DNA of 63,226 nt, filler included, from Octopus bimaculoides (lineage: Eukaryota), in the NCBI RefSeq assembly GCF_001194135.2. It is 7 parts of 7 records of this genome, joined end to end, with 100 filler letters (N's around TTAATTAATTAA, not from the genome) between each part and the next. Parts side by side here need not be neighbours in the genome. Positions count along the whole stretch, not along the records: positions 6,793 to 24,037 come from NC_068985.1; 6 more parts are not named here. The stretch is one strand, 5' to 3'. The translations under genes and the position numbers were made by a program. Within the stretch, counting starts at the first letter, position 1; each line of letters opens with the position of its first letter. The notes under the pieces are model-generated. The model searched no databases. It was not told where the DNA came from and worked only from the letters and a program-made list of their open reading frames with translations. Shown here piece after piece: positions 4,248 through 24,137 of the stretch.

Positions 4248-4744
4248 TGTGTGATATATATATGAGTACATAAGTGTGACTTAGTATGTAGCTTTTAAGC
4301 TACTGACCCTGAATGGGAAGATCTGCAAACAGATCTCTGACTCATTTTGGAGAATTGACTGCAATTGCTTCCTCCAGAGTCATATCCTAATGGTGATCAT
4401 ATTTGGCACAAAGCATCACGTAAAAGAAGCGCCGAAAATAATCTCTGGATTTTGCAGTCAATTTCGATTCTGCTCAAAATTTATTTCCAAGTTATGAAAA
4501 TTGTTATTGTACAAAAAAACTTGTTGCAAAAAATCATCTAAAAACATACAGTAACGAAAACTTAAGAATCCAAAATTTCAGGATTGTGGGTCCAGATTTG
4601 GGGCCCGAAATGTTTTTAATTTACTCATGGAGTTGACCTGATTCCAAAATGGTATGATGTGCTGGGCAACAGCCTCTAGGAGTAAAGATGAAAAAGTGTG
4701 ACACACTGACATTCGCATTTATTATATTAGAAGTCACATGACCT

Positions 4745-6792: not shown

Positions 6793-6833
<41 letters not shown>

Positions 6834-7129
6834 GATATATATATTCCGAGAAGTGACATGTTTTCAAGGGAAGTTATATCTGGCCACTTAAAATGAGGAA
6901 CTCACAGATAATTCTGAAAGTGAAAACAATTCTTCATCCACAATCTTTAGTCCGACAAAATACATTGGGAATAGAGTAATGTATATTCCAGCAGTCTCTA
7001 TGCTATGCAACAAATAGTTTACAAACCAACAAAAGAAGTCCTTGCAATCAACCAATTTGCATAGTGTTAATGACAAAGCGTTAATGTAGACTCGTGCTAT
7101 GTGTGCATATGCTCTATCTCACAGCCTTT

Positions 7130-7540
7130 TAAAGAGAAGGACTTTAGTGAGTGGAATGTTCCGCATTGCATGCTTTACGAATTTTGTAAAGAGAACAATG
7201 CAATATATGGGAGGAAAAACATATTTGAGTTTTCGGAAATACCAAAGGTGCTTTAACAAATTTAAAAACGGTGATTTCGATTTTCCTTTTTTTTTTTTTT
7301 TTCTTTGGACTGGTATCGATCAGGAAGATCAACTGTTTTCAATAATGACGCATTGAAAACTACATTTGCAGAGGTTCCACGTCCAAGTATCGAGAACTTA
7401 TCCCAGTGGTTTAATAAACGTTGGTCAGCTGTACAGGATCATCTCAAGCAGATTAGGAAACTGTATAGAGAAGAGAAGTGTGAACATGAACTATCAACAC
7501 AAAGGGAGTCGTCCTGCATAATGATAATGCAAGTAATCCG
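7130..7540 (+). mobile_element. Degenerate mariner transposase N-terminal fragment
   Basis: Frameshifted HCMLYEF...QRCFNKFKNGDFD...RSGRS...AVQDHLKQIRK; same layout as the 1085-1540 fossil. Confidence 0.7.
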
Positions 7541-9451
7541 TCTTTCATTCTTCTTCGTTGCAGAGAATTAATTGGTTCGAAGCAGAAGCAACATGTAATC
7601 ATTGAGTTGACGAAGGATGAATGCAGGGAGGCTGACATCCACAGAAGGCTACAAGGTTATTTCAAATTATTTTGCCAGAAAAATGTCCTCCCTTAGCTAC
7701 CATTATTTTACTCTGTAGATACAGTAGTGTCACTCTATGGTGCTGGAAGGTTACACGCGATCTTCAATCTAATCACACAACAACTAAGTTGTAATTTTTT
7801 AACTGATCCGTGATTATTGTCACCGAAGAATTTTCTTGGAGAATTATGTTAATTATTTGATGGGTTTGTCTGCCAACCATCTCCAATCTCACCACCAACA
7901 GCACCACCACCGTCGTCAAATGACTGGCTGCCTGTTGTTATGAATAACCTTGAAACTTTGTCTGCGTGAGAAATCTGCGATGTTTTGGCAAGGAACGAAG
8001 AAACAATATTTTCAGTTGTAGTTAATAACAGCTTTAGTAAGTTGTGAATAAAGATTAACGTTTATATCAATAAAGACTGACGTTTATATCAATAAACACT
8101 TGCGTTTTAGTCAATGACGACATCTGCAAACCTGCAATATGTCTATTTTTGTAAACAGATCGAACACAGAAACAAACGGTTTCCCTTTGCTATCCCCCAC
8201 AACAAACATCAAGTAAATAAAAGACATGCCAGAAAAAATAGCTAACTTACTAAATCATATTTCTTTTGGTAGAATTAAGCTGATATTATTTGGGAAGTTT
8301 TTACATGGGAAAATGACATTCAACTAAAAGTAGTTTGCTATCTCTTATATGCTATTGTTAATAATACCGAAACATCTCATGTTTCAGTATTATCCAGACT
8401 CTTCAGCCATACATAGTTAAGTCATTACAGCGATCCCTTTTACAAGACTTGATACTAGCCACGGAGGAAATCTTCCCACAGTCGATTGACCAGCTAAAAT
8501 GTGTTGCCAAATCTACGTCAAATCACAGCGTACTGGACACGTCAGATAATGTAATCCTAGTTGCATGATGTATGATTTAAAAGACGGGATTGTCATCGCT
8601 GTAACATTTCAATCAACAGGCACACGATCCGCAATCACCGTTCAGTTATTTTTCGTACATTAGTCTGTATTTACTTTCTATTCACTGTACATTCTCTTCA
8701 CATAGTATGTCCTATTTTTTGTACAAGACACTCGATCTTCTTTTCATCCCCTCTTCAGAATTCCCTCTGGGAGTATGATATGGACCTTGGTTTTCTATAT
8801 TTCCGTATTTTGTCACGGTCTTTGTTGGTGCTAGATTGAGAAGAATCAGACACTGAGATGAATAAAGCACTTCAATGTTGTAGAATCGCTGATAACCGAA
8901 ACGATTGTGGGTGTCGGTTCATCATAACAGTCTTTAATCACTTCGTTATCTACAAATGGATCGTAGTAAATGTGAGGTTGGGGCATTGAAACCTTTGTAA
9001 ATGACATAAGAACAGTAATACAAGTGAGCAGGACACATCTTCGATTGGAAATTCAAGACGAAATCGACCCGGTATTTTAGTTGACGGTTATCTATTTTTC
9101 AAGAGATCGCCTAACGGTGCTGTTGACATCCTTGTGATATTTGTCCGAAATGTTTCAGCTAATATTATGCAATGTTTAGTTTTTCCATTTCTTTTTTTTT
9201 TTTTTTTTTTTTTTTTTTTNNNNNNNNNNNNNNNNNNNNNNNNNNNNNNNNNNNNNNNNNNNNNNNNNNNNNNNNNNNNNNNNNNNNNNNNNNNNNNNNN
9301 NNNNNNNNNNNNNNNNNNNNNNNNNNNNNNNNNNNNNNNNNNNNNNNNNNNNNNNNNNNNNNNNNNNNNNNNNNNNNNNNNNNNNNNNNNNNNNNNNNNN
9401 NNNNNNNNNNNNNNNNNNNNNNNNNNNNNNNNNNNNNNNNNNNNNNNNNNN

Positions 9452-9501
<50 letters not shown>

Positions 9502-10087
9502 GGGTGTGTTTGTGCGCATAATTGTGTCTGTGTGTATAGTGCCTGGAAAGGGAAATAGAGATTGTTGTACGAGAGATAACAGAAAAGTGACTACATATTA
9601 CGTGCCTGTTGTTATAGCTGTTGTTGCTCTTGCTGCCAGATCGTCTTGCTAAGACAAACCTATGATCGGTGTTGCAGTTGTGATCATGTCGTCTTTTAAG
9701 GACTACATTATCCTATATGTCCGACAGGGAGCGATTTGAAGGACATTTGCTTACAATTTTTAACAGCTTTTAACAGTCCACATGGAATCACGTCCCTTTG
9801 CTCAGTAATTTGGTATCACGGGCTCTTCTACATTATCTTATTCAACATGCTTGTATCATTTCGACAAAAAGTACTCGCCTTATATCATTGTGTCGGAATC
9901 ACATACATTGAGTATATGCAGTGGCTTTAACTCCTATTTATTTTGTCTTATAGTACCATGAAACTACTTTCAGAATATTATCTAGTAGGTTGTATTACAG
10001 AAGATTCCGGTTATGTTATTCCATTAAAGTATTTATATATATTGTATATATGTATATATAAATATATAGGTATGTATATGTGTATAC

Positions 10088-10131
<44 letters not shown>

Positions 10132-10388
10132 ATATATGTGTATATATACAAATGTGTGTGCCTAATTATAGATGACTATGGCTAATAAGATACGCAAATA
10201 TACAAATAATTAGTGTGGTCATTGTTGCGTTCGCATGCAGGCTATCTAATATTTTGAACTACTAATGAAGAATTAATGATTAAAACTCCACACTGATTAT
10301 ATAAGTATGTGTGTACGTGTACTATGTGCGTGCGCGCATGTGTGAGTGTGTATGTGAATGTATATGTAAAAATATACTTATATGATAT

Positions 10389-10560
10389 ATCTTCTTCTTA
10401 ATATATAAAATCCGTTCTGTCTGTCTGTTTGTGCGCTTATAACTCGAGTATTGTTCATCCGATCGCGCTGAAATTTTAAATATGGATACATGAGGGAGCG
10501 TTAGTTTCAAAGTGAGAATCGCTATTTTTGTAATCTTTATGTCCTGTTTGTTCCGCCATT
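10389..10560 (+). mobile_element. Possible non-autonomous Helitron-like 5' segment
   Basis: TC...ATATATAAAA start, (CTGT)n, then CCGATCGCGCTGAAATTT, a layout typical of DINE-1/Lep1-like elements; no 3' end found. Confidence 0.4.
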
Positions 10561-11499
10561 AAAACAACCAGTTGCTCAGACAGCCGGCATATACCATTTC
10601 GTTAGCAACAAGGGGTGTACAGGATGATAGTAAGCCAAAACCGTCGCTATGCGGTCTCACTTCTTTCCTCCCTCTCTCTGTAGGGTTAATAATCTTAATC
10701 TTTAGTTACAGCTTCTTATTGAAACTACATAATAGGCAGAATTGTCGGATTAAGACAGTAGGGTGTTTTGAGGGAGATTTGCTGCAATTTCTACCAGGTC
10801 TAGCTACCATGTAGAGGTCTCCCTCATTGGCTTATACATACAAACATACATACATNNNNNNNNNNNNNNNNNNNNNNNNNNNNNNNNNNNNNNNNNNNNN
10901 NNNNNNNNNNNNNNNNNNNNNNNNNNNNNNNNNNNNNNNNNNNNNNNNNNNNNNNNNNNNNNNNNNNNNNNNNNNNNNNNNNNNNNNNNNNNNNNNNNNN
11001 NNNNNNNNNNNNNNNNNNNNNNNNNNNNNNNNNNNNNNNNNNNNNNNNNNNNNNNNNNNNNNNNNNNNNNNNNNNNNNNNNNNNNNNNNNNNNNNNNNNN
11101 NNNNNNNNNNNNNNNNNNNNNNNNNNNNNNNNNNNNNNNNNNNNNNNNNNNNNNNNNNNNNNNNNNNNNNNNNNNNNNNNNNNNNNNNNNNNNNNNNNNN
11201 NNNNNNNNNNNNNNNNNNNNNNNNNNNNNNNNNNNNNNNNNNNNNNNNNNNNNNNNNNNNNNNNNNNNNNNNNNNNNNNNNNNNNNNNNNNNNNNNNNNN
11301 NNNNNNNNNNNNNNNNNNNNNNNNNNNNNNNNNNNNNNNNNNNNNNNNNNNNNNNNNNNNNNNNNNNNNNNNNNNNNNNNNNNNNNNNNNNNNNNNNNNN
11401 NNNNTTACGGATACAACTGCTTACAAAAATAGCGATTAATGTATAATTTCTTTCTATGTTCATAATTTTTTGCTTACAATATTGGGAAAAATATGCCAC

Positions 11500-13735
11500 C
11501 ATAGAAAAGACGTACTCTCCCCAGAAACCTCGAGAAGATCAAATCTTTCCTCCTGCAATGTAACCCAGGAAATATTCTGATGATAGGTGACTTCAACCTA
11601 CCCTCTGTAGATTGGTTCACTAATATTGTTAGACCAAGAACCTTCACCTCAAGCTCAGACAAAGCAGCAGTGGAGTTACTTTTTAAATTTATGGATAATT
11701 TTTTCCTGTCACAACTCGTCCATGAACCAACCAGAAACAGCCAAAGTGTCTTGGACCTAGTCCTAAGTAACCATGCTAACACTGTTCATAACATCACAGT
11801 GGAAAGAACCCTCCTGTCCGATCATGACATCGTAGTCTGTAACCTCCATCTTCAGCATCCAAAAATTTGGCATAGATCACAAACTCCAATGCACCCATTT
11901 GATATGAATTTACACAAGCCAAACTAGAGTGAGATCACTGAAAACTTATTGCAAGTGGACTGGTCCTTCACCCTTGCCTCCTCCAATACCACAATGAACA
12001 CGAACGCATGGCAACGATTTGAGGACACAGGCACCCAGATATGCTCAAAACACATCCACACGACTCATAAATAACAGTAGATGCAGGATTCCAAAACAGA
12101 GAAATGTGCTCACCTGGAGAATAAAAAGAATAAACCGAAAAATCAACACTCTAAAATACCACCATCAGCATCACCCCCAATTGAGAAAATTAACAACCTT
12201 GGAATTAAAGAAACAACAACTGCAGGACGGTATGGGAACACTCATAAACGACAAAAGAGCTGCAGAAGAAGCTTGGGCTATTAAAAATATAATGAATAAT
12301 CCTAAGGTCTTTTACTCCTTTGCAAAAACACAGAGGACAACAGTTTCCTCTATTGGCCCACTGGTTGACGGAAACGGCATCCTTCACGGTAATGCCAAAA
12401 ACATGGCTGAGATCCCACAAAGTCAATACTGCTCTGTTTTCAGTGACCTTGATTCAATTGACTCAAGCAGCTTTGCTTCTTTGAATCCTTTGAGAACCTG
12501 TTGAGATCAAGAATAACAGCCTTCCTAGAACAAAATCATCTTCTAAATTGCAACCAGCATGGCTTTCGTAGTGGGAGGGACTGTCTAACACAGCTCTTCC
12601 ACCACTTTGGTGACATCTTAAATGAACCAAGTGAGGACTCCAACGCGGATGTCAAATACCTTGATTTCAGCAAGACCTTTGACAAAGTGGACACAATATA
12701 TCGTTAAGGGAACTATCCAACACTGAAGTAGGTATAAAGCTACTTCAACGGATTAGGTATTTCCTAAGAAACAGGACCCAGTATGTTGTGGTTCATGGCA
12801 TCCACTCCAGACCAGCAAAAGTCATCAGCGGAGTATCGCAGGGTACTCTGCTGGGTTCACTTCTTTTTATTGTCTGTATCAATGACATTGCAGATTCCAT
12901 TGAACATAACACCATTAAAATATTTGCAGATGACTCTAAACTCCAGAATGTCATTAAGGGAGCATGTGATCGAACGATGCTTCAAACGGACCTATGTGCA
13001 GTAAACCAGTGGGCACGAAAATACAATATGCAGTTGAACGAAGAAAAATTTGTGCTCATCCACTTTGGGAAAGAGGGCACACTCAAACAACTATATACGC
13101 TACGTCGGGAGACCTACTTGAACTGTTGGATAATATCAGAGACTTAGGTGTAGCTGTCGACAGCAACCTTAGCTGGAGTGTGCACATCAACAAAAAAGTC
13201 GATGTTGCTCGTAGAACGTGCTCATGGATCCTCAGAACTTTTCAATCTAGAGATCATGAAACCATCATCCTTCTCTTCTCCACATTCACTAGGCCCCACC
13301 TCGAGTACTGTTGCCCATTGTGATCCCCCTACAAAAAATAAGAAATAATGAGGATCGAAGCGCCACAAACAGCTGAAGCTCTATTCTCTGCAACACCACC
13401 GTGAGCGATACATTATTTGCACCATGTGGAAAATATTCCACAAATATTGTCCAAATGATATCGGTATTATGTTTACAATTCACCCAAGACTAGGCCCCCG
13501 TGCAATGCATCCCCTACAAATTAAAGTAAAAAATGACCTCACAAATTCCTCCAGGAAATACCGGATAAACCACCTACACCTGGATACGTCTCAACCAACA
13601 ACAACTCTCTTTTTGAGTGGTCCATGGTGTCCTGAAATAATTAATTAAAAGACTTTTCCAGGTGGTGCTATTGAGTTAGTCATGACCTGGGCCGATAAAG
13701 GTCGAAACCAATCTAAGTTATCTAAGTTATATATA
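11500..13735 (+). mobile_element. Decayed CR1-like LINE ORF2 (AP endonuclease C-terminus, RT, 3' end)
   Basis: ILMIGDFNLP; NQHGFRSGRDCLTQL; YLDFSKTFDKVD; SGVSQGTLLGSLLF; IKIFADDSKL; RDLGVAVDSNLSW; TRPHLEYCCPL; frameshifts, stops and deletions; (TCTAAGTTA)2 tail. Confidence 0.9.
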
Positions 13736-14813
13736 TAATTTCGTGTTGCATCTCATATATATATNNNNNNNNNNNNNNNNNNNNNNNNNNNNNNNNNNNN
13801 NNNNNNNNNNNNNNNNNNNNNNNNNNNNNNNNNNNNNNNNNNNNNNNNNNNATATATATGTATATATATAATCACTTCATGTACATTATATATATATATA
13901 TATACATCTTTGTATGTGTGTGCATGTATGTTTATAATGTGATGGTAGTTTTTCTAATTGTTTACTATATAGTTTGATCTTAACTAAAACGCCAGTGCCC
14001 ATTCAGTTAAGAAGAAAATATAGTTTTAAATTAACAATTCAAAATTATGCAACCCGGATTTCCGTGAATGCGAAATAACAAACCGTATTCCGAAATTAAT
14101 TTTCGTACTTGACTATTTTCATAAGCTCGAAATGCTGTAACCTGCGGTAACTGCACCACGGGGAATGCCTGCATTCATTAACAAAGTGATAATATTATTT
14201 ATATAATATCATAAATTTACTCTCAAGACAGTTCATGTTAACGAACAGTTATAGAGATGTTATTCAATATTCGTCGGACAAGGCTGAAAGAAAGTGTTTA
14301 GCTTGAGTTCTTTATTACTTGATGCCTGAAAGCATCACATTCTCTTTGGTATACGCATTTCTTATTTCTTTAAAGTTGGTATGGGGTGACTTAAGAAAGT
14401 GAAATTTTGGAAAAAACAATTAATTTTCAAGGCTTTGGTTGATATTTGTAACACGCCGGCCAACCACATTGCGGCCTGCCTCATTTTCTTTGTTGGTTCA
14501 ACAAGCATCCACGCATACGCACCATGTATTGTCTTTCTCATAATAGGAGAAGTGGTTTATTATATTTTTTTTTTAAAGGAAAGTTTGGAAAGAGTAATTT
14601 TTGAAAGATTTGGTTGTTATTTCAAGCATATCGAGCGACCACATTGAGGACTCCTTCATCGTGTTTGCTTGTGTGTCTATTTGTATTTATTTTTCTGTAT
14701 GTATGTATCAATCTGTCAGTCAATCTCTCTGCCTGGCTGTCAAATTCACTATTCATATGCATACATGCATACATATGCATACATGCATACATATGCATAC
14801 ATGCCACATACAT

Positions 14814-14858
<45 letters not shown>

Positions 14859-15064
14859 TAGACAGNNNNNNNNNNAGACAGACAGACAGATAGACAGACA
14901 GACAGATAGACAGACAGACAGATAGACAGACAGACATGATAAAATATAGGCTGTTAGATGTTTGTGTTTACAAACAAGACAGAAAGAAAATAAGTACAAG
15001 AATTCTGATTATTGGAAACGTGAAACGAGTAGCTTGTAACATATGTAATTAATACATAGGTACA

Positions 15065-15067
<3 letters not shown>

Positions 15068-15156
<89 letters not shown>
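15068..15156. repeat. (TG)n microsatellite, one of dozens
   Basis: Directly visible. Confidence 0.98.
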
Positions 15157-15159
<3 letters not shown>

Positions 15160-15273
15160 ATGCACATTTCGAGTGAGAGAGAGTGTGTGACTGTAATGTA
15201 ATTGTTAGGGTATGTGTGTGTGTGTGTACACACAACACATACATATATATATGTGTGTGTGTGCGTGTGTATA

Positions 15274-15448
15274 CGAGGGTTGATGTAAGGTTGTCGGCTT
15301 TAAGGCTGTCGTGAAAGGACCGGTTGAAGTGCCAATCTCCCGAGTTCTTTTACGGGACTTAAAAAAAATACTAAAGGACTGCTGCAGTAATTGTACGAAT
15401 TTGAGAGGGGAATACGTTGAATAAAATCATAACAAACTGATCCTCTTG
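15274..15448 (+). mobile_element. Short internally deleted mariner derivative
   Basis: TA|CGAGGG left end, CCTCTTG|TA right end; retains transposase C-terminus-like ...CTNLRGEYVE*. Confidence 0.55.
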
Positions 15449-15499
15449 TATATTCTTTTACCCAAAGTTAGGAATTTTCAAGACACGCAAACACACATA

Positions 15500-15553
15500 T
15501 TTACTCTTTTGTTACTTTCAGCTGAAGTACTGTGGCCATGCTGGGGCACTGCC
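15500..15553 (-). mobile_element. SINE family A 3' tail fragment
   Basis: Minus strand GGCAGTGCCCCAGCATGGCCACAG...AAAAGAGTAA matches the family A tail. Confidence 0.7.
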
Positions 15554-15564
15554 AACAAAAATAG

Positions 15565-15652
15565 AAAAATATGGGACGCTTCACGAATTTGCGTGTCATT
15601 CTTGCGCAGGGACCATGTTGATTTTCTCCGTATCGTTCCAATTTTATTATAT
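15565..15652 (-). pseudogene. U6: U6 snRNA pseudogene (5' stem-loop missing)
   Basis: Minus strand AAAATTGGAACGATACGGAGAAAATCAACATGGTCCCTGCGCAAGAATGACACGCAAATTCGTGAAGCGTCCCATATTTTT matches the U6 3' ~85 nt; ACAGAGA box and AGC triad are mutated. Confidence 0.93.
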
Positions 15653-15693
15653 ATATGCATATATATATATATATACAAACATGCATACATACA

Positions 15694-15728
<35 letters not shown>

Positions 15729-17309
15729 GTATATGAAGTGTGTGCGTGTGTGTGTGTGTTTGTGCGTATAAGTGGTTAAAACAAGACTAAATGCCAGTGT
15801 CGAGAGGCAGTGTTATGTCAGTTGTAATGAGAGAGAAAATTTGGTGATGGGCGAGGTTAGACTGGAATATCAGAACGGTTGTGACGTCATGACCGACATC
15901 ATTTTCTTTTCTTCTCTTTTTTTTTTTTTTTTACTAGTTTTGGTTCCTTCTCATCTTTCGCAACAAAACTGATGGTTCTTGTTGTTGAAAGCTGTGTATA
16001 TATCTGTGATGTCTATGACTTTTGTATATAGTTCTGCGATGGCTGCTTTCAGACGGACACCNNNNNNNNNNNNNNNNNNNNNNNNNNNNNNNNNNNNNNN
16101 NNNNNNNNNNNNNNNNNNNNNNNNNNNNNNNNNNNNNNNNNNNNNNNNNNNNNNNNNNNNNNNNNNNNNNNNNNNNNNNNNNNNNNNNNNNNNNNNNNNN
16201 NNNNNNNNNNNNNNNNNNNNNNNNNNNNNNNNNNNNNNNNNNNNNNNNNNNNNNNNNNNNNNNNNNNNNNNNNNNNNNNNNNNNNNNNNNNNNNNNNNNN
16301 NNNNNNNNNNNNNNNNNNNNNNNNNNNNNNNNNNNNNNNNNNNNNNNNNNNNNNNNNNNNNNNNNNNNNNNNNNNNNNNNNNNNNNNNNNNNNNNNNNNN
16401 NNNNNNNNNNNNNNNNNNNNNNNNNNNNNNNNNNNNNNNNNNNNNNNNNNNNNNNNNNNNNNNNNNNNNNNNNNNNNNNNNNNNNNNNNNNNNNNNNNNN
16501 NNNNNNNNNNNNNNNNNNNNNNNNNNNNNNNNNNNNNNNNNNNNNNNNNNNNNNNNNNNNNNNNNNNNNNNNNNNNNNNNNNNNNNNNNNNNNNNNNATA
16601 TATATATACACATATATATATATACATTTGTTCTTGAATGAGTACGTAATTACATATGCATACATACACACACAAATATATATATATATATATATATACA
16701 TAGTGGTATGTTATATAAACAATAAAGATCGTTGAAACTCCAGGTGTCTATACAATTACTACCTGCTGCATTTGCTAAAAATACCCAGTTGTAAAGTACT
16801 GTAGCTACAGTCTGCAGCAGTGGATGTCACTGGAACTTTTACTGTGTTAATACCGCGTTTAATATAGACTTTCATCGTAGCTTATTTACATATCCTACAA
16901 ATATATATATATATATATATATCTGTGTGTATGTGTGTGTGTTCTTTTGGAGGGAGGAAGAGTGGATCTCGAAGTAGATGATAAAGCTACAAATAATAGC
17001 GTGTAAATGTTGGGTTAAAAAAATCTTTTGGATAGAAAAATTAAAAGGTTGCCCGTTGAACTCAGACCCACGTCTCCTGGAAGCATGATAGGTGTTCTGC
17101 CATTGAATCAAAGCAACCATTTGAATTTCTCTATCCATTTTAGAAACTTTATTCATACCAATGATAATTGTATGTTGCTGACGTCACTAGAATTTATAAA
17201 GTTCTGGAGAACATGAAGTAATCCGTTTTTTGTTTTGGAATTATTTCATGTTCTCAAGAAGTGTATAAATTCATATGACGTCAACTGGGGGGAGTGCGTG
17301 TGTGTGAGT

Positions 17310-17350
<41 letters not shown>

Positions 17351-17737
17351 TGTGTGTGTTTTAGTATGTATACATATATTGTGTGGAGTCAAAATGTTTG
17401 CAATATTTTGGTAACTTACTTTATTTATCAATTCGCAATAGAAGCATCGTGTTGCACCGTCGTGTTGCACTGTCTGCTAGTTCTTTGATCCCACGCTAAT
17501 ACCAGTTCTTGTTCATCGAGGTGGAGAACTTTTTTACTGAAGCTTCCACTTCCTTTTAATTGATAAAGAGCTACGTACAACAAGAATCAAAACATTGAGG
17601 TGTGTATTTGTTCTTACTTTGTTTCTATACTCTCGAACGTGTACAAGGTTCTTCGCTATTGGGAGTCGTATAGGAGGTCGACCTTTCTTTGTACACTATG
17701 ACTGCAAACAACACACCTGCACTGAAGGACATAAGTG

Positions 17738-17788
17738 GACTACTAGATACTATATTTCGGCGTAATTCTCGCCTCTTCAGTAGTAGTC
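17738..17788 (-). ncRNA. Type I hammerhead ribozyme, canonical core
   Basis: GACTACTA-CTGAAGA-GGCG(AGAATTA)CGCC-GAAA-TA(TAG)TA-TC^TAGTAGTC; 8-bp helix I, 4-bp helix II, short helix III, AUC site. Confidence 0.9.
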
Positions 17789-17965
17789 ACCTCTTCGTCT
17801 TTAGAGCTGAGTAGAAACAACTCTCTTATCAGTTGAATTTAACAAGCAAAACGCCTGTTGATGTTTGTAATCATTTGCTACATCGAGCTTAAAATATTGC
17901 AATCACGCAGAATAGCGAAAATCAAAATATTGATACGCTACACTACACACACACCCACACCCGCG

Positions 17966-18009
<44 letters not shown>

Positions 18010-18216
18010 AACACACACAACACACACACACACAACACACACACACACACACACACACATGAGCACACACACACGAGCACGTACACAAACACGCATGCAC
18101 ACACATACACACAGAGTTCTGTTTCTGATTTGTAATTTGCTTTAATGACCACCAGGTGGATGAGAGTCGAAGTTCAGTCTGGGCAGATTATAATTTAAAC
18201 TATCAGAATAGTATAA

Positions 18217-18428
18217 TGCGGAGGTCTGGCAGTAGCAGTAGCATGCTGGACAAAATGATTAGCAGTATTTCGTGTCTTTATGTTCTGAGTTCAAATTCCG
18301 CTAAGGTCGACTTTGCCTTTAATCTCTTTGGGGTCGATAAAATAAGTATCAGTTGCGTACTTGGGTCGATGTAATCGACTTGCCCACTTCCGTGAAACTG
18401 CCGCTCTTATGCCAAAATCTGAAACTAA
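18217..18428 (+). mobile_element. SINE family B
   Basis: TTCTGAGTTCAAATTCCGC...GTCGACTTTGCCTTT...GGGGTCGATAAAATAAGTA core. Confidence 0.8.
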
Positions 18429-18445
18429 TGTAATGTATTATAATA

Positions 18446-18790
18446 CTCTTTATTCTTTTACTTGTTTTCAGTCATTTGACTGTGGCCATGCTGGAGCACC
18501 GCCTTTAGTCGAATCAAATCGACCCCCAGGACTTATTCTTTGTAAGTCTAGTACTTATTCTACTGGTTTCTTTTGCCGAACCGCTAAGTTACGGGGACGT
18601 AAACACACCAGCATCGGTTGTCAAGCGATGTTGGTGGGACAAACAGTCACACAAACATATACACACATACATACATATATATTCAGTCTACCAAATCCAC
18701 TCACTTGCCCAAGGTGCCACGCAGTGGGACTGAACCGGCAACCATGTGGTTGGTAAGCAAGCTACTTACCACACAGCCACTCCTACACCT
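18446..18790 (-). mobile_element. SINE family A with internal deletion
   Basis: Reverse complement of tail and head; the CACAAGGCTTTGG segment is missing. Confidence 0.85.
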
Positions 18791-18862
18791 ATGTATAATA
18801 CTGTGATGACATAATATATATTGGAGTCAACAATGCCATGGTTCATATTATTTGCTGAATGT

Positions 18863-19077
18863 ATTCTTTTTTACTCTTGGCACAAGGCCCGAAATTTTGG
18901 GGGAGGGGACCAATCAATTAGATAGATCCCAGTACGCAACTGGTACTTAATTTATCGACCCCGAAAGGATGAAAGGCTAAGTCGACCTCGGCGGAATTTG
19001 AACTCAGAACGCAAAGACAGACGAAATACTGCTAAGCATTTCGCCCGGCTTGCTAATGTTTCTGCCAGCTCGCCGCC
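18863..19077 (-). mobile_element. SINE family B, full length
   Basis: Reverse complement of family B head, core and tail. Confidence 0.85.
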
Positions 19078-19504
19078 GACGAGATATGACACATTACCTT
19101 CTCACTTATACGTCATAACAATAGTTTTAAAACCTATTTGAAATGTCAGTGTGAACGTGAATCGTTGAGACGGACATGATTCTTATTGTAGCTGTTGTTA
19201 ACGTCAAGTCTGATCAAACCAAGCAAAACGATATTCAAAGATACTCAGGCTAAGACTCTCCCTTTTATTTATTGTCAGTAATACAATATCTTGGTCCACG
19301 TCATATACAATGGATTCGTTTGAAAACGGTAATATATTTCGTTTCGGGAAGATTTTGCTCGTCTTTGTTGTAGGTCGAATGAATGTTTTGTGCATGTGCA
19401 TGTGAGCAAGTGCGTGTGCATATGACTGTGTGTGGTATACATGTAAAATCTGAGTGGAAGTACCTATACTTCATATTCTCTCATATGTTAACATAAGGTC
19501 AGCA

Positions 19505-19697
19505 TTTTGAGAGTAGGGGAAGCCGATTGCCGATTACATCGACCCAATACTCAAATGATACTTCTTTTATCGACTCTGAAAGAATGAAATATAAAGTCGA
19601 CTTCAGTATTTGACTCAGAATGTATAGAGAACGGAAGAACTGTGGTTAAGCATTTTGACCGACGTGCTAACGAGTCTACCAGTTAGCTTGCCTCGCC
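19505..19697 (-). mobile_element. SINE family B, diverged
   Basis: TTTTATCGAC...AAAGTCGAC...GACTCAGAA reverse core. Confidence 0.7.
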
Positions 19698-20201
19698 GAT
19701 ACTTAATATTGAAATATCAGTTTGGAGAAAGCAGTTTGCCCTGTAAACTTAGTTTCAATCAGCGCCTTCGTTAGGGCTATGTGGAATGAAGACATTTTCC
19801 TTGGTATATAAGTGGCTACGGTCACATGGAGAAGAAGATATTTGACAGTCATTCTTGTTTTGTTTCACTATTTGGGTGCAGTAAAATATCGTACCAGTAG
19901 CATAATGATTGCTCCGAGTTCCGATTGTAGAGGCAAGAGTGGGTAGAAGAGACCTTAGACACTCTATTGAAAAGTTGACAGCATCGCAAATGTCAACAAT
20001 GTCAACTAACCTATCTGGATTGGACTGGTGCCCGTTGCGTGATGCCGGACTTAATATCCTGCACGATACAGTCACTGGAGACCAGCGTGGTAAACTCAGA
20101 AGACGTTCGGAGTAATTAGAATTATGTAAGAGACTAGGATGAACTTCCATAGTATTTTAAGAGATGTTTGATGATTATTTTATATTAGCGTTTTGATTTT
20201 C

Positions 20202-20237
<36 letters not shown>

Positions 20238-20404
20238 ACATCACTCGCAGTGTAGCAGCTGACAGTTACCCCTGTCTGAAATAAAACATTTGCAAGCTAG
20301 GTTGCAAGGGCACCTCTATTAAGCACACCTTTCATGTTGGTAGAAAGATAAAATATTTCCTATCATCTCCAAACATAGGTTTCTTTCAGGCATGCTCTTA
20401 ACTC

Positions 20405-20650
20405 ATCAGCAGGTAACTGGCAGAGTTTGTCTGAAATCCCCAGAAAACAAGACTGTGACTCCACCAATAATGTTCATGCTTAGCGGCATTTTGCCCGTCT
20501 TTAACATCCTGAGTTCAAATTCCGCCAAGACTGATTTTGCCTTTCATCCTATCGGAGTCAATAAAATACGCACAAGTTGAGTTTTGGGGTCAATATAATC
20601 TACTTGCTTCTTACTCCCAAATTACTGGCTTTATGCTAAAATCTGGAACC
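20405..20650 (+). mobile_element. SINE family B, diverged
   Basis: CTGAGTTCAAATTCCGCC...TTTGCCTTTCATCC core. Confidence 0.7.
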
Positions 20651-20880
20651 CATTTATACAAATTTTAAATATGAAATAATAAAAATAGTTTTTATCTTCC
20701 ATAGTATGTGAAACTGCGTAGTAACTCTATGAAATTATGATTCTTAAATGAAGAATTTTCATAACACTATTTAAATACCAAGTAATTTTCCCCAGTATTC
20801 AAGATGCAGTCCCATTGCACAACCACATTACAGTTCCTTCATTTGTCTGCCCCACTTACCAATAATATATAAACTGTGTA

Positions 20881-21095
20881 AGGCGGCGAGCTGGCAGAAT
20901 CTTTAGCAAACAGGACGAAACGCTTAGTGGCATTTTGTCCGTCTTCACGTTCTGAATTCAAATTCCGCCGAGGTCGACTTTGCCTTTCTTCCTTTCGGGG
21001 TCGATAAAATAAGAACCAGTTGAGTACTAGCATCGATGCAATCGACTTACCCCTTCCCCGAAATTGCTGGCCATATACCAAAATTTGAAATCAAT
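20881..21095 (+). mobile_element. SINE family B, full length
   Basis: AGGCGGCGAGCTGGCAGAATC head, core, tail. Confidence 0.85.
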
Positions 21096-21220
21096 ATATA
21101 GACTGTGTTACAGTTTATACATTATAGTTATTGCAGTGTATATATTATGACATAATCCATATCGTATTTGTTACTGTGTTTATTTTATATTTGTTGGACT
21201 GCATATATTATAATAATTGG

Positions 21221-21425
21221 TTTCAAATTCCAGCATGCAGCCAGTAATTTCGGGGGGCGAGAGGCAACATCGGCTCCAGTGCTCAACCGGTGCTTATTTT
21301 ACCGACTCCGAAAAGATAACGACTAAAGTCGACTACGGCGGAATTTGAACTCGTAACTTAAATACGGATGAAATGCCGTTAAGCATTTGCCCGGCGTCTT
21401 AACATTCTGCCAGTTCGCCGCCTTA
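21221..21425 (-). mobile_element. SINE family B, inverted relative to 20881-21095
   Basis: Reverse complement of head and core. Confidence 0.8.
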
Positions 21426-21924
21426 TAGATATCATCATCGTCTCGGTCTATATATTACAGTTGTTACAGTCAATATATTTCTAGAAAAAGTAGAGATTTA
21501 TATTTTTGTTGCTATCTTCTCACCACCGCAGCCCCACTACATTTTTTTTTTACCTTTAATCCTATTCCTGATATCTCATCTAACATCTTATCTGCTTTTC
21601 TTTAATCTTTAAAGCTGCTTCGTCTTCTACTTCCTCTTGTTTTTATTACTGTTATTATTTTGTCGATTTTTTGGGGTGTTTTTTGGTCTTCTTGTGATAA
21701 TTGTTGTTGCTGTTCTTCTTCTTCCTCTTATTCTACTTCTTCGTTTTCTTCTCTGTTTTGATCTTCCTTTTCTTCAATTACAATGACGTCATTAGAAATC
21801 CATGCGATCGATAGATATATGTGGTTTCCTTTTTTGTCCTTATCAATTTATCAATTAAACTATGCTACTACTATTACTACTACTACTACTACTAGCAGCA
21901 GCAGCAGCAGCAGCAGCAGCAGCT

Positions 21925-21984
<60 letters not shown>

Positions 21985-22346
21985 CAGCTGTGTTCAGAAG
22001 AGATGATTTCATATTCCTTCCTACTCTTCTGCCATATTCTATTATTCTGGATGTTTAGTTCTGAGTCTATCTATCAATTATTCCTATTTCGGAATAAAAG
22101 AATAACGGAATGGGAATTTATTACTTTCTAACAGCAAATACTCATCTGTATGCATGGTTGTATATATATATATGCGAGTGTTATGTATCTATGTATGCAT
22201 GTATTTACGTACATATGTTTGCATTTATGTAAGAATGTATGTTAGGTAGGTACCATATAGATAGATAGATAGATACATACATACATACATACATACATAC
22301 ATACATACATACATACATACACATACACATATATATATATATATAT

Positions 22347-22388
<42 letters not shown>

Positions 22389-23099
22389 NNNNNNNNNNNN
22401 NNNNNNNNNNNNNNNNNNNNNNNNNNNNNNNNNNNNNNNNNNNNNNNNNNNNNNNNNNNNNNNNNNNNNNNNNNNNNNNNNNNNNNNNNNNNNNNNNNNN
22501 NNNNNNNNNNNNNNNNNNNNNNNNNNNNNNNNNNNNNNNNNNNNNNNNNNNNNNNNNNNNNNNNNNNNNNNNNNNNNNNNNNNNNNNNNNNNNNNNNNNN
22601 NNNNNNNNNNNNNNNNNNNNNNNNNNNNNNNNNNNNNNNNNNNNNNNNNNNNNNNNNNNNNNNNNNNNNNNNNNNNNNNNNNNNNNNNNNNNNNNNNNNN
22701 NNNNNNNNNNNNNNNNNNNNNNNNNNNNNNNNNNNNNNNNNNNNNNNNNNNNNNNNNNNNNNNNNNNNNNNNNNNNNNNNNNNNNNNNNNNNNNNNNNNN
22801 NNNNNNNNNNNNNNNNNNNNNNNNNNNNNNNNNNNNNNNNNNNNNNNNNNNNNNNNNNNNNNNNNNNNNNNNNNNNNNNNNNNNNNNNNNNNNNNNNNNN
22901 NNNNNNNNNNNNNNNNNNNNNNNNNNNNNNNNNNNNNNNNNNNNNNNNNNNNNNNNNNNNNNNNNNNNNNNNNNNNNNNNNNNNNNNNNNNNNNNNNNNN
23001 NNNNNNNNNNNNNNNNNNNNNNNNNNNNNNNNNNNNNNNNNNNNNNNNNNNNNNNNNNNNNNNNNNNNNNNNNNNNNNNNNTATATACCCTCCACACCC

Positions 23100-23400
23100 G
23101 GAACTCCTTCTCCCGCACTTCATTCAACCTTATATACTGCATCCGATGCAATCTACGCAAAGATCTATATGTTGGTTAGACGGGCCGTCGGCTAGCCGAC
23201 TGGTTCACGGAGCACCTTTGGGACGTTCGTCGGCGAAGGCATACCCCGTCGCCCGTCGTTTTTGTTTGGCCGGCCACCCCACCTCACACCTCACAGTCTT
23301 CAGCCTTACCCTACACCAAAGATCCACCAACACCAGACTTCGCCTTGAACTGCGCTACATTTTTTACTCTTCGAACTCAAACTCCATTTGAACTCGACAC
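23100..23400 (+). mobile_element. Penelope-like element GIY-YIG endonuclease, pseudogenised C-terminus
   Basis: NLIYCIRCNLRKDLYVG*TGRRLADWFTEHLWDV / PVARRFCLAGH...LTVFSL...TRLRLELRYIF / TLRTQTPFELD across frameshifts; typical PLE GIY-YIG layout. Confidence 0.85.
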
Positions 23401-23551
23401 GACCCTCTACTTCCAGTGACATGTTTCACACACCTTTAAAACATTTTTATTTTATTATCATTTGATTATTATTTTTAATTCTTATTCTTCAGTTTCTATC
23501 TATCACACACACTCCAATATGCATAAGTCAAAATAAGAGTTAAAACAACCC

Positions 23552-24022
23552 ATTTGTGGCCATTGAATTGTTTTGACTCTCATTTCTAGCAATGCCGGTA
23601 CCGCTTAGTACTCTCTGTCACTTTAGTGACGTCTATAAATTTGCCTTTAGGTTGTTAAATTGCTAATAAGCTACCCATATTATTTATAGCTTTCACTTTT
23701 ACCGTTTTTGAAATCAGCGTATAACGTTTTTCTTATAAGCTGACAAGATGAGTTAAGTTTAACCCTAGGCATGGTAAGAGCCACCGATGAGAACTAAGAT
23801 GGTCTGCATCAAGATTCGAAATCACTGGTGATCTGGCTGTCCTCTAGGTAACTTATTTCCCTTGTCAGTCATTAAGATAGTGGATTTGTGGCTATTGAGT
23901 TGTTTTGACTCTTATTTCTAGCAATACCGATGCCACATAGTGTCACTTTAGTGTCACTTTAGTGGGGTCTATAAATTTGCCTTTAGGCTGTTAAATTGTT
24001 AATAAGCCACCCATATTATTTA
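23552..24022 (+). repeat. ~135-bp direct repeats (23552-23686, 23884-24022), period ~332-336 bp, enclosing a hammerhead (pseudo-LTR / retrozyme-like)
   Basis: Both copies read ATTTGTGGC.ATTGA.TTGTTTTGACTCT.ATTTCTAGCAAT...CTATAAATTTGCCTTTAGG.TGTTAAATTG.TAATAAGC.ACCCATATTATTTA. Confidence 0.85.
23764..23848 (+). ncRNA. Type I hammerhead ribozyme with extended helix I (U4C core variant)
   Basis: AGCCA-CCGATGA-helix II (GAA/TTC...GATG(GTCTG)CATC)-GAAA-TCAC(TG)GTGA-TC^TGGCT; distal CCTAG/CTAGG pairing gives a helix I internal loop. Confidence 0.85.
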
Positions 24023-24137
24023 AATGAATATATATATNNNNNNNNNNNNNNNNNNNNNNNNNNNNNNNNNNNNNNNNNNNNTTAATTAATTAANNNNNNN
24101 NNNNNNNNNNNNNNNNNNNNNNNNNNNNNNNNNNNNN

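What the first reader, a model, noticed from the sequence alone, without database searches (positions are those of the whole stretch)
23100..24022. Penelope-like GIY-YIG end followed by a ~332-bp hammerhead-bearing repeat unit (pLTR/retrozyme)
A PLE endonuclease fossil ends at ~23400. About 150 bp later is a monomer-and-a-half unit: ~135-bp direct repeats (period ~332) flanking a type I hammerhead with long helix II, 4-bp helix III and a helix I internal loop, the architecture used for loop-loop tertiary contacts. PLE pseudo-LTRs and animal non-LTR retrozymes are known to carry type I hammerheads in units of roughly this size that yield circular RNAs. The core is the rarer CCGAUGA variant. Whether unit and GIY-YIG belong to the same element is inferred from adjacency only.
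Basis: partly seen in the sequence, partly recalled or inferred. Interest (0 to 1): 0.85.

Follow-up and report, generated by a model that had tools for sequence, protein, structure and literature searches.

The report
Dead Penelope-like element tail with hammerhead
This is the decayed 3' end of a Penelope-like retrotransposon in an animal genome, followed by a short repeat unit with a worn-out hammerhead ribozyme motif; this association is already well described, so the finding is real but ordinary.

Summary
Window 23084-23419 (+) is a broken GIY-YIG endonuclease with one in-frame stop and two frameshifts. It is 44-56% identical to Penelope-like element (PLE) endonucleases, the closest being from Octopus bimaculoides. 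Two 135-139-nt direct repeats follow, R1 at 23552-23686 and R2 at 23884-24022 (86% identical, period 332-336). They flank a 197-nt unique segment. That segment folds into a long hairpin holding a type I hammerhead-like motif at 23779-23838, which meets every core position except U4 (C here).

A motif this good is expected 0.0025 times per 15 kb by chance. Nine related PLE loci all carry a minimal hammerhead 58-262 nt after the endonuclease stop, so a ribozyme at this position is expected.

Four points limit the claim:
- Rfam's hammerhead models do not recognise the motif.
- Its architecture differs from the relatives' minimal hammerheads.
- No second copy could be found, so there is no covariation test.
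- The copy is old and broken, so C4 is most simply a decay mutation.

The unique segment is not homologous to the sequence upstream of R1. The 336-nt unit therefore looks like an ORF-less, retrozyme-like partner joined head-to-tail to the PLE copy.

Verdict: a known kind of element, and a fossil copy.

The parts
22330..22388 (.). (AT)n microsatellite directly before the assembly gap (22389-23081) that cuts off the 5' part of the PLE copy
   Evidence: Together with the (AT)n at 24027-24037 it brackets the insertion. PLEs are reported to prefer microsatellite targets such as (TA)n (PMC8557442).
23084..23419 (+). Fossil C-terminal GIY-YIG endonuclease of a Penelope-like element. In-frame TAG at 23177-23179, frameshifts near 23240 and 23387, stop TGA at 23417-23419.
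   Evidence: It is 53% identical to the Octopus bimaculoides GIY-YIG protein P0003 across both frameshifts. No reverse transcriptase remnant lies outside the gap.
23420..23551 (+). A+T-rich 3' untranslated stretch. It holds a CCAAT at 23513-23517 and the left arm of an 18-bp inverted repeat (23531-23585) that reaches into R1.
   Evidence: No minimal hammerhead is found here even with 2 core mismatches.
23552..23686 (+). Direct repeat R1 (135 nt). It contains GCAAT and the best-conserved 21-mer GTCTATAAATTTGCCTTTAGG (TATAAA at 23633-23638). It is the probable 3' end of the endonuclease-bearing copy, 267 nt after the stop.
   Evidence: Tails of relatives are 156-260 nt long and hold CCAAT plus TATATAAA.
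23687..23883 (+). Unique segment U (197 nt) between the repeats. It is not homologous to the sequence upstream of R1.
   Evidence: local alignment score 17 against a shuffle mean of 17.9.
23739..23869 (+). Long imperfect hairpin (rod). Its outer part serves as an extended helix I of the hammerhead-like motif.
   Evidence: (-42.9 kcal/mol, z = -3.17, 0 of 200 shuffles as good).
23779..23838 (+). Type I hammerhead-like motif. Helix I 23779-83/23834-38; core CCGAUGA 23784-90 (C4 at 23785 in place of U); helix II 23791-23817; GAAA 23818-21; helix III 23821-32 (quasi-palindrome AUCACUGGUGAU); predicted cleavage after C23833.
   Evidence: Twelve of 13 conserved core positions are met. The fold lies 7.2 kcal/mol above the alternative rod. 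No Rfam Hammerhead_1 match.
23884..24022 (+). Direct repeat R2 (139 nt, 86% identical to R1, with an 11-nt internal duplication TAGTGTCACTT). It is the 3' end of the 336-nt unit U+R2.
24027..24037 (.). (AT)n run at the edge of the piece, 4 nt after the end of R2
17738..17788 (-). Exact core CUGAAGA...GAAA, helix I 8 bp, helix II 4 bp, helix III 3 bp. It sits in a roughly 580-nt non-coding segment between (GT)n and (AC)n runs.
   Evidence: (Rfam Hammerhead_1 at 26.7 bits, E=6.6e-5 in a 151-nt search; gathering score 34).

Best explanation
The region is the fossil 3' end of a 5'-truncated canonical Penelope-like retrotransposon, with its endonuclease at the C-terminus. It appears to have been inserted into an (AT)n microsatellite. 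The endonuclease-bearing copy most likely ends with R1. Joined head-to-tail behind it is a 336-nt ORF-less unit (U+R2) that shares only the terminal 135-nt R module with the PLE copy. This unit carries a type I hammerhead embedded in a rod-like hairpin. It would be a retrozyme-like, non-autonomous partner of the PLE.

In an intact family member the expected mechanism is as follows. Transcripts running through the unit fold the hammerhead and cut after C17, here C23833. Cutting could occur in a single motif, given the 4-bp helix III, or in a dimer through the quasi-palindromic helix III. This leaves a 5'-OH and a 2',3'-cyclic phosphate. The processed, possibly ligated, RNA is then copied by the PLE reverse transcriptase and integrated by the GIY-YIG endonuclease at microsatellites, producing head-to-tail junctions.

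Shown here: the endonuclease homology, the repeats, the motif and its improbability by chance, and the presence of hammerheads in the tails of related PLEs. Inferred: cleavage, RNA processing, and the division into two units. This particular copy is dead. The endonuclease has three disabling lesions, R1 and R2 have diverged 14%, and the U4-to-C change is most simply one more decay mutation that would weaken or abolish cleavage.
For: - Endonuclease homology.
- Relatives are true PLEs. L127 has reverse transcriptase motifs (PGRPI, YIDD) directly upstream of the endonuclease, and the CX4CX2C linker is present in P0009, P0011 and P0016.
- All nine related loci examined carry a hammerhead core 58-262 nt after the endonuclease stop. 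Seven are exact. L123 and L126 are degenerate. L128 holds a further solo copy with no endonuclease beside it. Proximal helix I shows a compensatory A-U to G-C change, and helix II is 100% paired.
- The motif is present with 12 of 13 core positions and G10.1-C11.1.
- Chance expectation is 0.0025 per 15 kb.
- Hairpin z = -3.17. The 336-nt unit folded as a circle gives z = -3.57.
- R1/R2 repeats.
- U is not homologous to the sequence upstream of R1.
- The PLE copy's own tail has no minimal hammerhead.
- L127 shows head-to-tail tail duplication in this family.
- (AT)n lies on both sides.
- Literature: PLE hammerheads in pseudo-LTRs (PMC4209133); animal retrozymes of 170-400 nt, including 350-390 nt units in mussels (PMC7229834); retrozymes related to PLE pseudo-LTRs (10.64898/2026.07.22.740005); non-autonomous elements sharing 3' ends with PLEs and forming head-to-tail insertions (PMC8557442).
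Against: - Rfam Hammerhead_1 and Hammerhead_3 give no match even at E<=10. The second hammerhead in the piece does score.
- The core has C4, a change reported to reduce activity considerably (PMC3088659).
- The hammerhead fold is 7.2 kcal/mol less stable than the competing rod.
- The architecture differs from the relatives' minimal hammerheads: no bulged nucleotide after A9, a long irregular helix II, and a 4-bp helix III with a loop.
- No DNA-level homology to the relatives' tails.
- No second copy of the unit in the piece or in any searchable collection, so there is no covariation or copy-number evidence.
- The split into a PLE copy ending at R1 plus a separate unit U+R2 rests on one negative alignment and on tail-length analogy. 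An internal duplication of R within a single element would look the same.
- The (AT)n runs are short and abut assembly gaps.
Confidence: 0.6

Rival explanations
1. It is one element only. R1-U-R2 is the 3' untranslated region of the same PLE, with an internal duplication of R, and the hammerhead is that PLE's own pseudo-LTR ribozyme.
For: All parts lie on the same strand and are contiguous with the endonuclease. Related PLEs always have their hammerhead in the tail. The copy's own tail up to R1 otherwise lacks any hammerhead, so the motif in U could be the missing one.
Against: The hammerhead would lie 365 nt after the stop, against 58-262 nt in relatives. It has a different architecture from the family's minimal type. 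Both R copies end with the same sequence and the second is followed by the flank, which is what two element ends in tandem look like. The stop-to-R1-end distance of 267 nt already resembles a complete tail.
Confidence: 0.22
2. It is a live ribozyme family with a C4 core. CCGAUGA would be the family consensus, not decay. Cleavage would be kept adequate by peripheral contacts, and tandem copies elsewhere would yield circular RNAs of about 330 nt.
For: U4C is a documented natural variant that still supports viroid infectivity (PMC3088659, citing Ambros and Flores 1998). T-to-C creates a CpG, which runs against the CpG-loss bias seen in the endonuclease fossil (CGG to TGG). The circular fold of the unit is unusually stable.
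Against: Only a single decayed copy is available. About 7% divergence per repeat copy predicts roughly one hit in 13 core positions by decay alone. The competing rod pairs C4 with G. There is no Rfam support.
Confidence: 0.1
3. It is a chance resemblance: an ordinary imperfect hairpin in a repeat happens to contain CCGAUGA and GAAA in hammerhead register.
For: The core is imperfect. Rfam hammerhead models fail. The minimum-free-energy fold is a plain rod. My descriptor thresholds were set after seeing the motif, and the loosest version expects 0.40 hits per 15 kb.
Against: With the motif's own helix lengths the expectation is 0.0025 per 15 kb. It is 5e-5 to 0.008 for the 620 nt downstream of a PLE endonuclease on the correct strand. 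That is exactly where nine related loci carry hammerheads. The G10.1-C11.1 pair and the palindromic helix III were not required by the descriptor, yet both match published PLE-hammerhead traits (PMC4209133).
Confidence: 0.07

Closest known systems
Minimal hammerheads in the pseudo-LTRs of Penelope-like elements (Cervera and de la Pena 2014, PMC4209133)
   Same: A type I hammerhead lies in the non-coding tail downstream of a PLE reverse transcriptase / GIY-YIG ORF, on the same strand. Helix I is short (5 bp), helix II is larger than usual, G10.1-C11.1 is present, and helix III is palindromic and could pair in a dimer. Relatives of this endonuclease fetched here carry exactly this published minimal type.
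   Different: The window's motif has a 4-bp helix III closed by a 4-nt loop (minimal type: 1-2 bp, no loop). It has no unpaired nucleotide between A9 and G10.1, has a 27-nt irregular helix II, and has C4. It sits in a segment that is not part of the endonuclease-bearing copy's own tail.
Animal non-LTR retrozymes (Cervera and de la Pena 2020, PMC7229834; Li et al. 2026 preprint, 10.64898/2026.07.22.740005)
   Same: The unit is ORF-less, about 330 nt and low in G+C. It carries one type I hammerhead with a stable helix III, as in invertebrate retrozymes, and has a rod-like predicted fold. Its size is close to the 350-390-nt mussel units. It is physically and evolutionarily linked to PLE ends.
   Different: Only 1.4 units and a single hammerhead are seen here. 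No tandem array, no second cleavage site and no expression data are available. The core is not canonical.
Classical satellite hammerheads of animals (Schistosoma Sm-alpha, newt satellite 2), Rfam Hammerhead_1 RF00163
   Same: Type I topology within a short repeat unit.
   Different: RF00163 does not match this motif. The canonical 6-bp helix I and 4-bp helix II spacing for loop-loop contacts is absent. By contrast, the second hammerhead at 17738-17788 (-) does match RF00163 at 26.7 bits.
Plant LTR retrozymes (Cervera et al. 2016, PMC4918200)
   Same: Direct repeats flank a non-coding core, and there is a hammerhead-processing logic.
   Different: In plants the type III hammerheads lie inside the long terminal repeats, and a primer binding site and polypurine tract are present. 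Here the hammerhead lies between the repeats and is type I.
U4C natural core variant of a viroid hammerhead (Ambros and Flores 1998, as cited in PMC3088659)
   Same: The same substitution at core position 4.
   Different: In the viroid the variant was shown to cleave weakly and to be viable. Here nothing shows that C4 is more than a mutation in a dead copy.

Membership tests
Hammerhead ribozyme, type I | Three helices around the core, with helix I open (5' and 3' ends in helix I) | tested here: met
   Helix I is 5 bp plus an extended rod, helix II is closed by a 5-nt loop, and helix III is 4 bp with loop CUGG.
Hammerhead ribozyme, type I | Conserved core C3 U4 G5 A6 N7 G8 A9 / G12 A13 A14 / A15.1-U16.1 / H17 | tested here: not met
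   Twelve of 13 positions are met. Position 4 is C (23785). U4C is a known weak natural variant (PMC3088659).
Hammerhead ribozyme, type I | Match to the curated covariance model (Rfam RF00163 or the hammerhead clan) | tested here: not met
   No hammerhead-clan match at E<=10 in 956-nt and 136-nt searches. The only match is RAGATH-1-hammerhead at 15.4 bits against a gathering score of 56.3.
Hammerhead ribozyme, type I | Helices maintained by compensatory changes among homologues | not testable with these tools
   No second copy was found in the piece or in the viral, metagenome or prokaryote collections. The source genome is not searchable here.
Hammerhead ribozyme, type I | Site-specific self-cleavage after H17 | not testable with these tools
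   This needs an in vitro transcription and cleavage assay.
Penelope-like element (canonical, C-terminal endonuclease) | GIY-YIG endonuclease of the PLE type at the C-terminus of the ORF | tested here: met
   39-61% identity to 20 PLE-type endonucleases (44-56% over alignments of at least 83 residues). Motifs LIYCIRC...LYVG(Q)TGRRLA..F.EHL.DVR...PVARRF are present. Pfam GIY-YIG alone is below the cut-off.
Penelope-like element (canonical, C-terminal endonuclease) | TERT-like reverse transcriptase upstream of the endonuclease in the same ORF | tested here: inconclusive
   The sequence upstream is a 693-N assembly gap. No reverse transcriptase remnant lies elsewhere in the piece. Relative L127 has the PLE reverse transcriptase directly upstream.
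Penelope-like element (canonical, C-terminal endonuclease) | Pseudo-LTR, meaning a partial head-to-tail tandem of the same element | tested here: not met
   U+R2 repeats only R. U is not homologous to the sequence upstream of R1.
Penelope-like element (canonical, C-terminal endonuclease) | Hammerhead motif in the terminal non-coding region | tested here: met
   A hammerhead-like motif lies 365 nt after the stop. Nine related loci have one 58-262 nt after the stop.
Animal non-LTR retrozyme | Tandem repeats of a 170-400-nt ORF-less unit, each with a type I hammerhead | tested here: inconclusive
   The unit size (332-336 nt) fits, but only 1.4 units and one hammerhead are present before the piece ends.
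Animal non-LTR retrozyme | Expression as linear and circular RNAs of unit length | not testable with these tools
   No transcriptome data are available. The predicted circular fold of the unit has z = -3.57, which is only compatible with this feature.

The most novel reading that the evidence does not exclude
The 336-nt unit represents a family of molluscan (possibly cephalopod) retrozyme-like elements. Its consensus hammerhead would naturally carry C4 and an unusually long, irregular helix II. It would borrow only the last 135 nt of a PLE for mobilisation. That would make it a functional core-variant hammerhead and a clean example of how PLE tails and retrozymes exchange modules.
Probability: 0.1. 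Interest if true: 0.5.

Novelty: new member of a known kind. Interest (0 to 1): 0.22.

Why it matters
Hammerheads in PLE tails and in animal retrozymes are established, and a 2026 preprint already argues that retrozymes derive from PLE pseudo-LTRs. This locus adds one decayed example of that association. Its modest value is as a physical junction. A PLE copy and an ORF-less hammerhead unit that share only a 135-nt terminal module sit head-to-tail, which is the arrangement expected if PLE machinery mobilises retrozyme-like partners through a shared 3' end. It also illustrates that Rfam's gathering thresholds miss both hammerheads in this 17-kb piece and all the minimal hammerheads in the related loci. 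Such motifs are therefore under-annotated in invertebrate genomes.

Tried and rejected
- A word-indexed protein search with the repaired endonuclease found nothing. The 49-residue frame-2 stretch worked.
- A LINE reverse transcriptase search for species identification gave two unnamed ENA hits with no DNA similarity to the window.
- DNA pattern scans for other copies gave nothing useful. The viral collection had no matches for two specific patterns. One pattern I chose was too short and gave only chance matches. The metagenome collection gave two 20-mer chance matches (rechecked in 58). The prokaryote genomes gave none.
- An nhmmer profile of the relatives' tails against the window showed no homology.
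- The octopus protein P0003 could not be placed on a contig, so the species of the window remains unproven.
- partly read non-existent files, because locus files hold several records. Both were repeated correctly.
- I looked for a degenerate minimal hammerhead in the PLE copy's own tail and found none.
- I rejected the classical pseudo-LTR reading.
- I rejected the MIR854 match at 23855-23953 (-) as unstructured chance similarity.
- I rejected dozens of microRNA 'matches' as microsatellite artefacts.

Full report
Setting. The piece (6793-24037) is animal genomic DNA. It is 37.6% G+C, has six internal runs of N, and is full of microsatellites. It holds a decayed LINE with an AP-endonuclease and RVT_1 at 11505-13320. 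It also holds a U6-like sequence at 15565-15668 (-) and six copies of a roughly 220-bp dispersed repeat between 18.2 and 21.4 kb. The region of the finding lies between an assembly gap (22389-23081) and the end of the piece.

The endonuclease. Six-frame translation of 23082-23460 shows LIYCIRCNLRKDLYVG*TGRRLADWFTEHLWDVRRRR in frame 3. It continues as YPVARRFCLAGHPTSHLTVFSLTLHQRSTNTRLRLELRYIFYSSNSNSI in frame 2 and returns to frame 3 (FELDTTLYFQ) before TGA at 23417-23419. Pfam GIY-YIG is only a weak match (E=0.0052, 17.5 bits against a cut-off of 22.6). A word-indexed search with the repaired peptide found nothing. An exhaustive HMMER scan with the 49-residue frame-2 stretch found one protein (P0003, E=1.3e-4). 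UniRef names it a GIY-YIG domain protein of Octopus bimaculoides. It aligns with the repaired fossil at 53% identity over 94 residues, across both frameshifts. It has Q where the fossil has the stop and R where the fossil has W, which are typical C-to-T decay changes.

Nineteen further homologues (P0004-P0022) give 39-61% identity, or 44-56% over alignments of at least 83 residues. Pairwise E-values run from 1e-12 to 1e-28. They are PLE proteins. Several carry the CX4CX2C linker before the GIY-YIG domain. Locus L127 has PLE reverse transcriptase motifs (PGRPI..., RYIDDC) directly upstream. tblastn finds this endonuclease only at 23087-23407 and finds no reverse transcriptase remnant in the piece. 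The copy is therefore 5'-truncated or continues into the gap.

The repeats. R1 (23552-23686) and R2 (23884-24022) are 86% identical, with start-to-start spacing of 332-336. R2 carries an 11-nt internal duplication. Similarity starts at ATTTGTGG and stops at ATATTATTTA in both copies. After R2 come 4 nt, an (AT)n run and the end of the piece. An (AT)n run also precedes the upstream gap. The 197 nt between the repeats (U) show no similarity to the 250 nt upstream of R1 (score 17 against a shuffle mean of 17.9). U+R2 is therefore not a 5'-truncated second copy of the endonuclease-bearing element, which is what a classical PLE pseudo-LTR would be. No other copy of the unit exists in the piece.

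The hammerhead-like motif. U contains a 131-nt imperfect hairpin (23739-23869; -42.9 kcal/mol, z = -3.17). At its tip the sequence can be drawn as a type I hammerhead: AGCCA / CCGAUGA / 27-nt helix II closed by G-C / GAAA / AUCA-CUGG-UGAU / C / UGGCU. Twelve of the 13 conserved core positions are met, and position 4 is C.

A descriptor with these helix lengths and any one core mismatch hits once in the piece. It hits 0.0025 times per dinucleotide shuffle of the piece. Looser descriptors expect 0.07 and 0.40. For the 620 nt after the endonuclease on the correct strand this scales to 5e-5 to 0.008, so chance is a poor explanation.

Other points weigh against the motif. Rfam's hammerhead models do not see it. 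In a 136-nt search only RAGATH-1-hammerhead aligns, in the same register, at 15.4 bits and E=2.1. The hammerhead fold is 7.2 kcal/mol above the competing rod, and restoring U4 in silico does not change that. The 336-nt unit folded as a circle is more stable than shuffles (z = -3.57), as reported for retrozymes, but this is only compatible with that reading.

Relatives. I fetched nine loci encoding related endonucleases from five ENA assemblies. None shares DNA similarity with the window, and a profile of their tails finds nothing in it. All nine carry a hammerhead core in the tail:
- Seven loci show 210-250 nt of homology beyond the stop. It contains CCAAT, TATATAAA and the nearly invariant CUGACGA-A-GGGCUAACGCUC-GAAACGUC. 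L123 and L126 are degenerate.
- L130 has gccc-CUGAUGA-a-gguauuuuauacc-GAAAAUUU-gggc.
- L131 has CUGAGGA-a-gccucguaugccgaggc-GAAAUAUC.

These are the published PLE minimal hammerheads: a bulged nucleotide after A9, G10.1-C11.1, and a 2-bp palindromic helix III without a loop (PMC4209133). On six distinct sequences, proximal helix I and helix II are 100% paired. There is one compensatory A-U to G-C pair and two one-sided changes. Rfam's gathering scan finds none of them. L127 also shows a head-to-tail duplication of its last roughly 66 nt that starts inside the hammerhead, so very short tandem tail copies do occur in this family.

What this means for the window. The window's motif is not the family's minimal type, however. 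It has a real helix III hairpin, no bulge after A9 and a long irregular helix II. The endonuclease-bearing copy's own tail (23420-23686, 267 nt, about the length of a complete tail in relatives) contains no minimal hammerhead, even with two mismatches allowed.

The simplest reading is two units in head-to-tail tandem that share R. One is the dead PLE copy ending at R1. The other is an ORF-less 336-nt unit (U+R2) with a retrozyme-style hammerhead. Non-autonomous elements that share only the 3' end with an autonomous PLE and form head-to-tail insertions have been described (PMC8557442). Animal retrozymes of 170-400 nt, including 350-390-nt units in mussels, carry type I hammerheads (PMC7229834). 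A 2026 preprint places retrozymes next to PLE pseudo-LTRs phylogenetically (10.64898/2026.07.22.740005). A single element with an internal duplication of R cannot be excluded.

C4. Here, though, the endonuclease has three disabling lesions, and R1 and R2 differ at 14% of positions. About one substitution in 13 core positions is what decay alone predicts. Without other copies the two readings cannot be separated.

A second hammerhead. Relaxing helix III to 3 bp exposed an exact-core type I hammerhead on the minus strand at 17738-17788: gacuacua-CUGAAGA-ggcgagaauuacgcc-GAAA-uauaguau-C-uaguaguc. Rfam Hammerhead_1 scores it at 26.7 bits (gathering score 34), E=6.6e-5 in a 151-nt search. It disappears in the piece-wide scan. 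It lies in a roughly 580-nt non-coding segment between (GT)n and (AC)n runs. It has no similarity to the unit at 23.5-24.0 kb and no endonuclease beside it. It shows that the genome carries hammerhead-bearing repeats of more than one family.

Verdict. It is overstated in function (tertiary contacts, circles, 'variant core') and inexact on 'pseudo-LTR'. The feature is a fossil member of a well-described association.

Noticed in passing
Rfam Hammerhead_1 scores it at 26.7 bits, below the gathering score of 34, and only in a small search. It sits in a roughly 580-nt non-coding segment flanked by (GT)n at 17286-17365 and (AC)n at 17945-18110, with 15-nt inverted repeats near both ends (17395-17409 / 17891-17905).
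   Followed up: partly
L123-L131 (e.g. L124 6647-6686, L130 about 869-912, L131 about 4696-4742): PLE-type minimal hammerheads lie 58-262 nt after the endonuclease stop in all nine related loci, preceded in seven of them by CCAAT and TATATAAA. None reaches Rfam's gathering score. L123's core reads CCAACGA (C4 and A5), as if a CCG intermediate had lost its CpG.
   Followed up: partly
L127 about 1734-1880: Head-to-tail duplication of the last roughly 66 nt of a PLE tail. The second copy starts inside the hammerhead core (ACGGGCUAACG...).
   Followed up: no
window 15565-15668 (-): U6 snRNA match at 89 bits, but with ACGGAGA in place of the ACAGAGA box and a 5' stem replaced by (AT)n. It is probably a U6 pseudogene sitting among microsatellites.
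   Followed up: no
window 11505-13320 (+): Decayed LINE with AP-endonuclease (Exo_endo_phos_2, E=8.5e-12) and RVT_1 (E=7.3e-10) spread over several frames. Its closest database proteins are unnamed ENA ORFs at 48% identity.
   Followed up: partly
window 18211-18432, 18859-19077, 19531-19669, 20476-20658, 20876-21100, 21215-21422: Six copies, in both orientations and 70-80% identical, of a roughly 220-bp dispersed SINE-like repeat. ARAGORN finds no tRNA-like head.
   Followed up: no
window 23855-23953 (-): Sub-threshold Rfam match to plant MIR854 (29.7 bits, gathering score 50). It covers only an unstructured part of the model and spans the U/R2 junction. I judged it chance similarity.
   Followed up: no
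window 23531-23585 (+): An 18-bp inverted repeat (AAATAAGAGTTAAAACAA / TTGTTTTGACTCTCATTT) straddles the start of R1. R2 keeps only the right arm.
   Followed up: no
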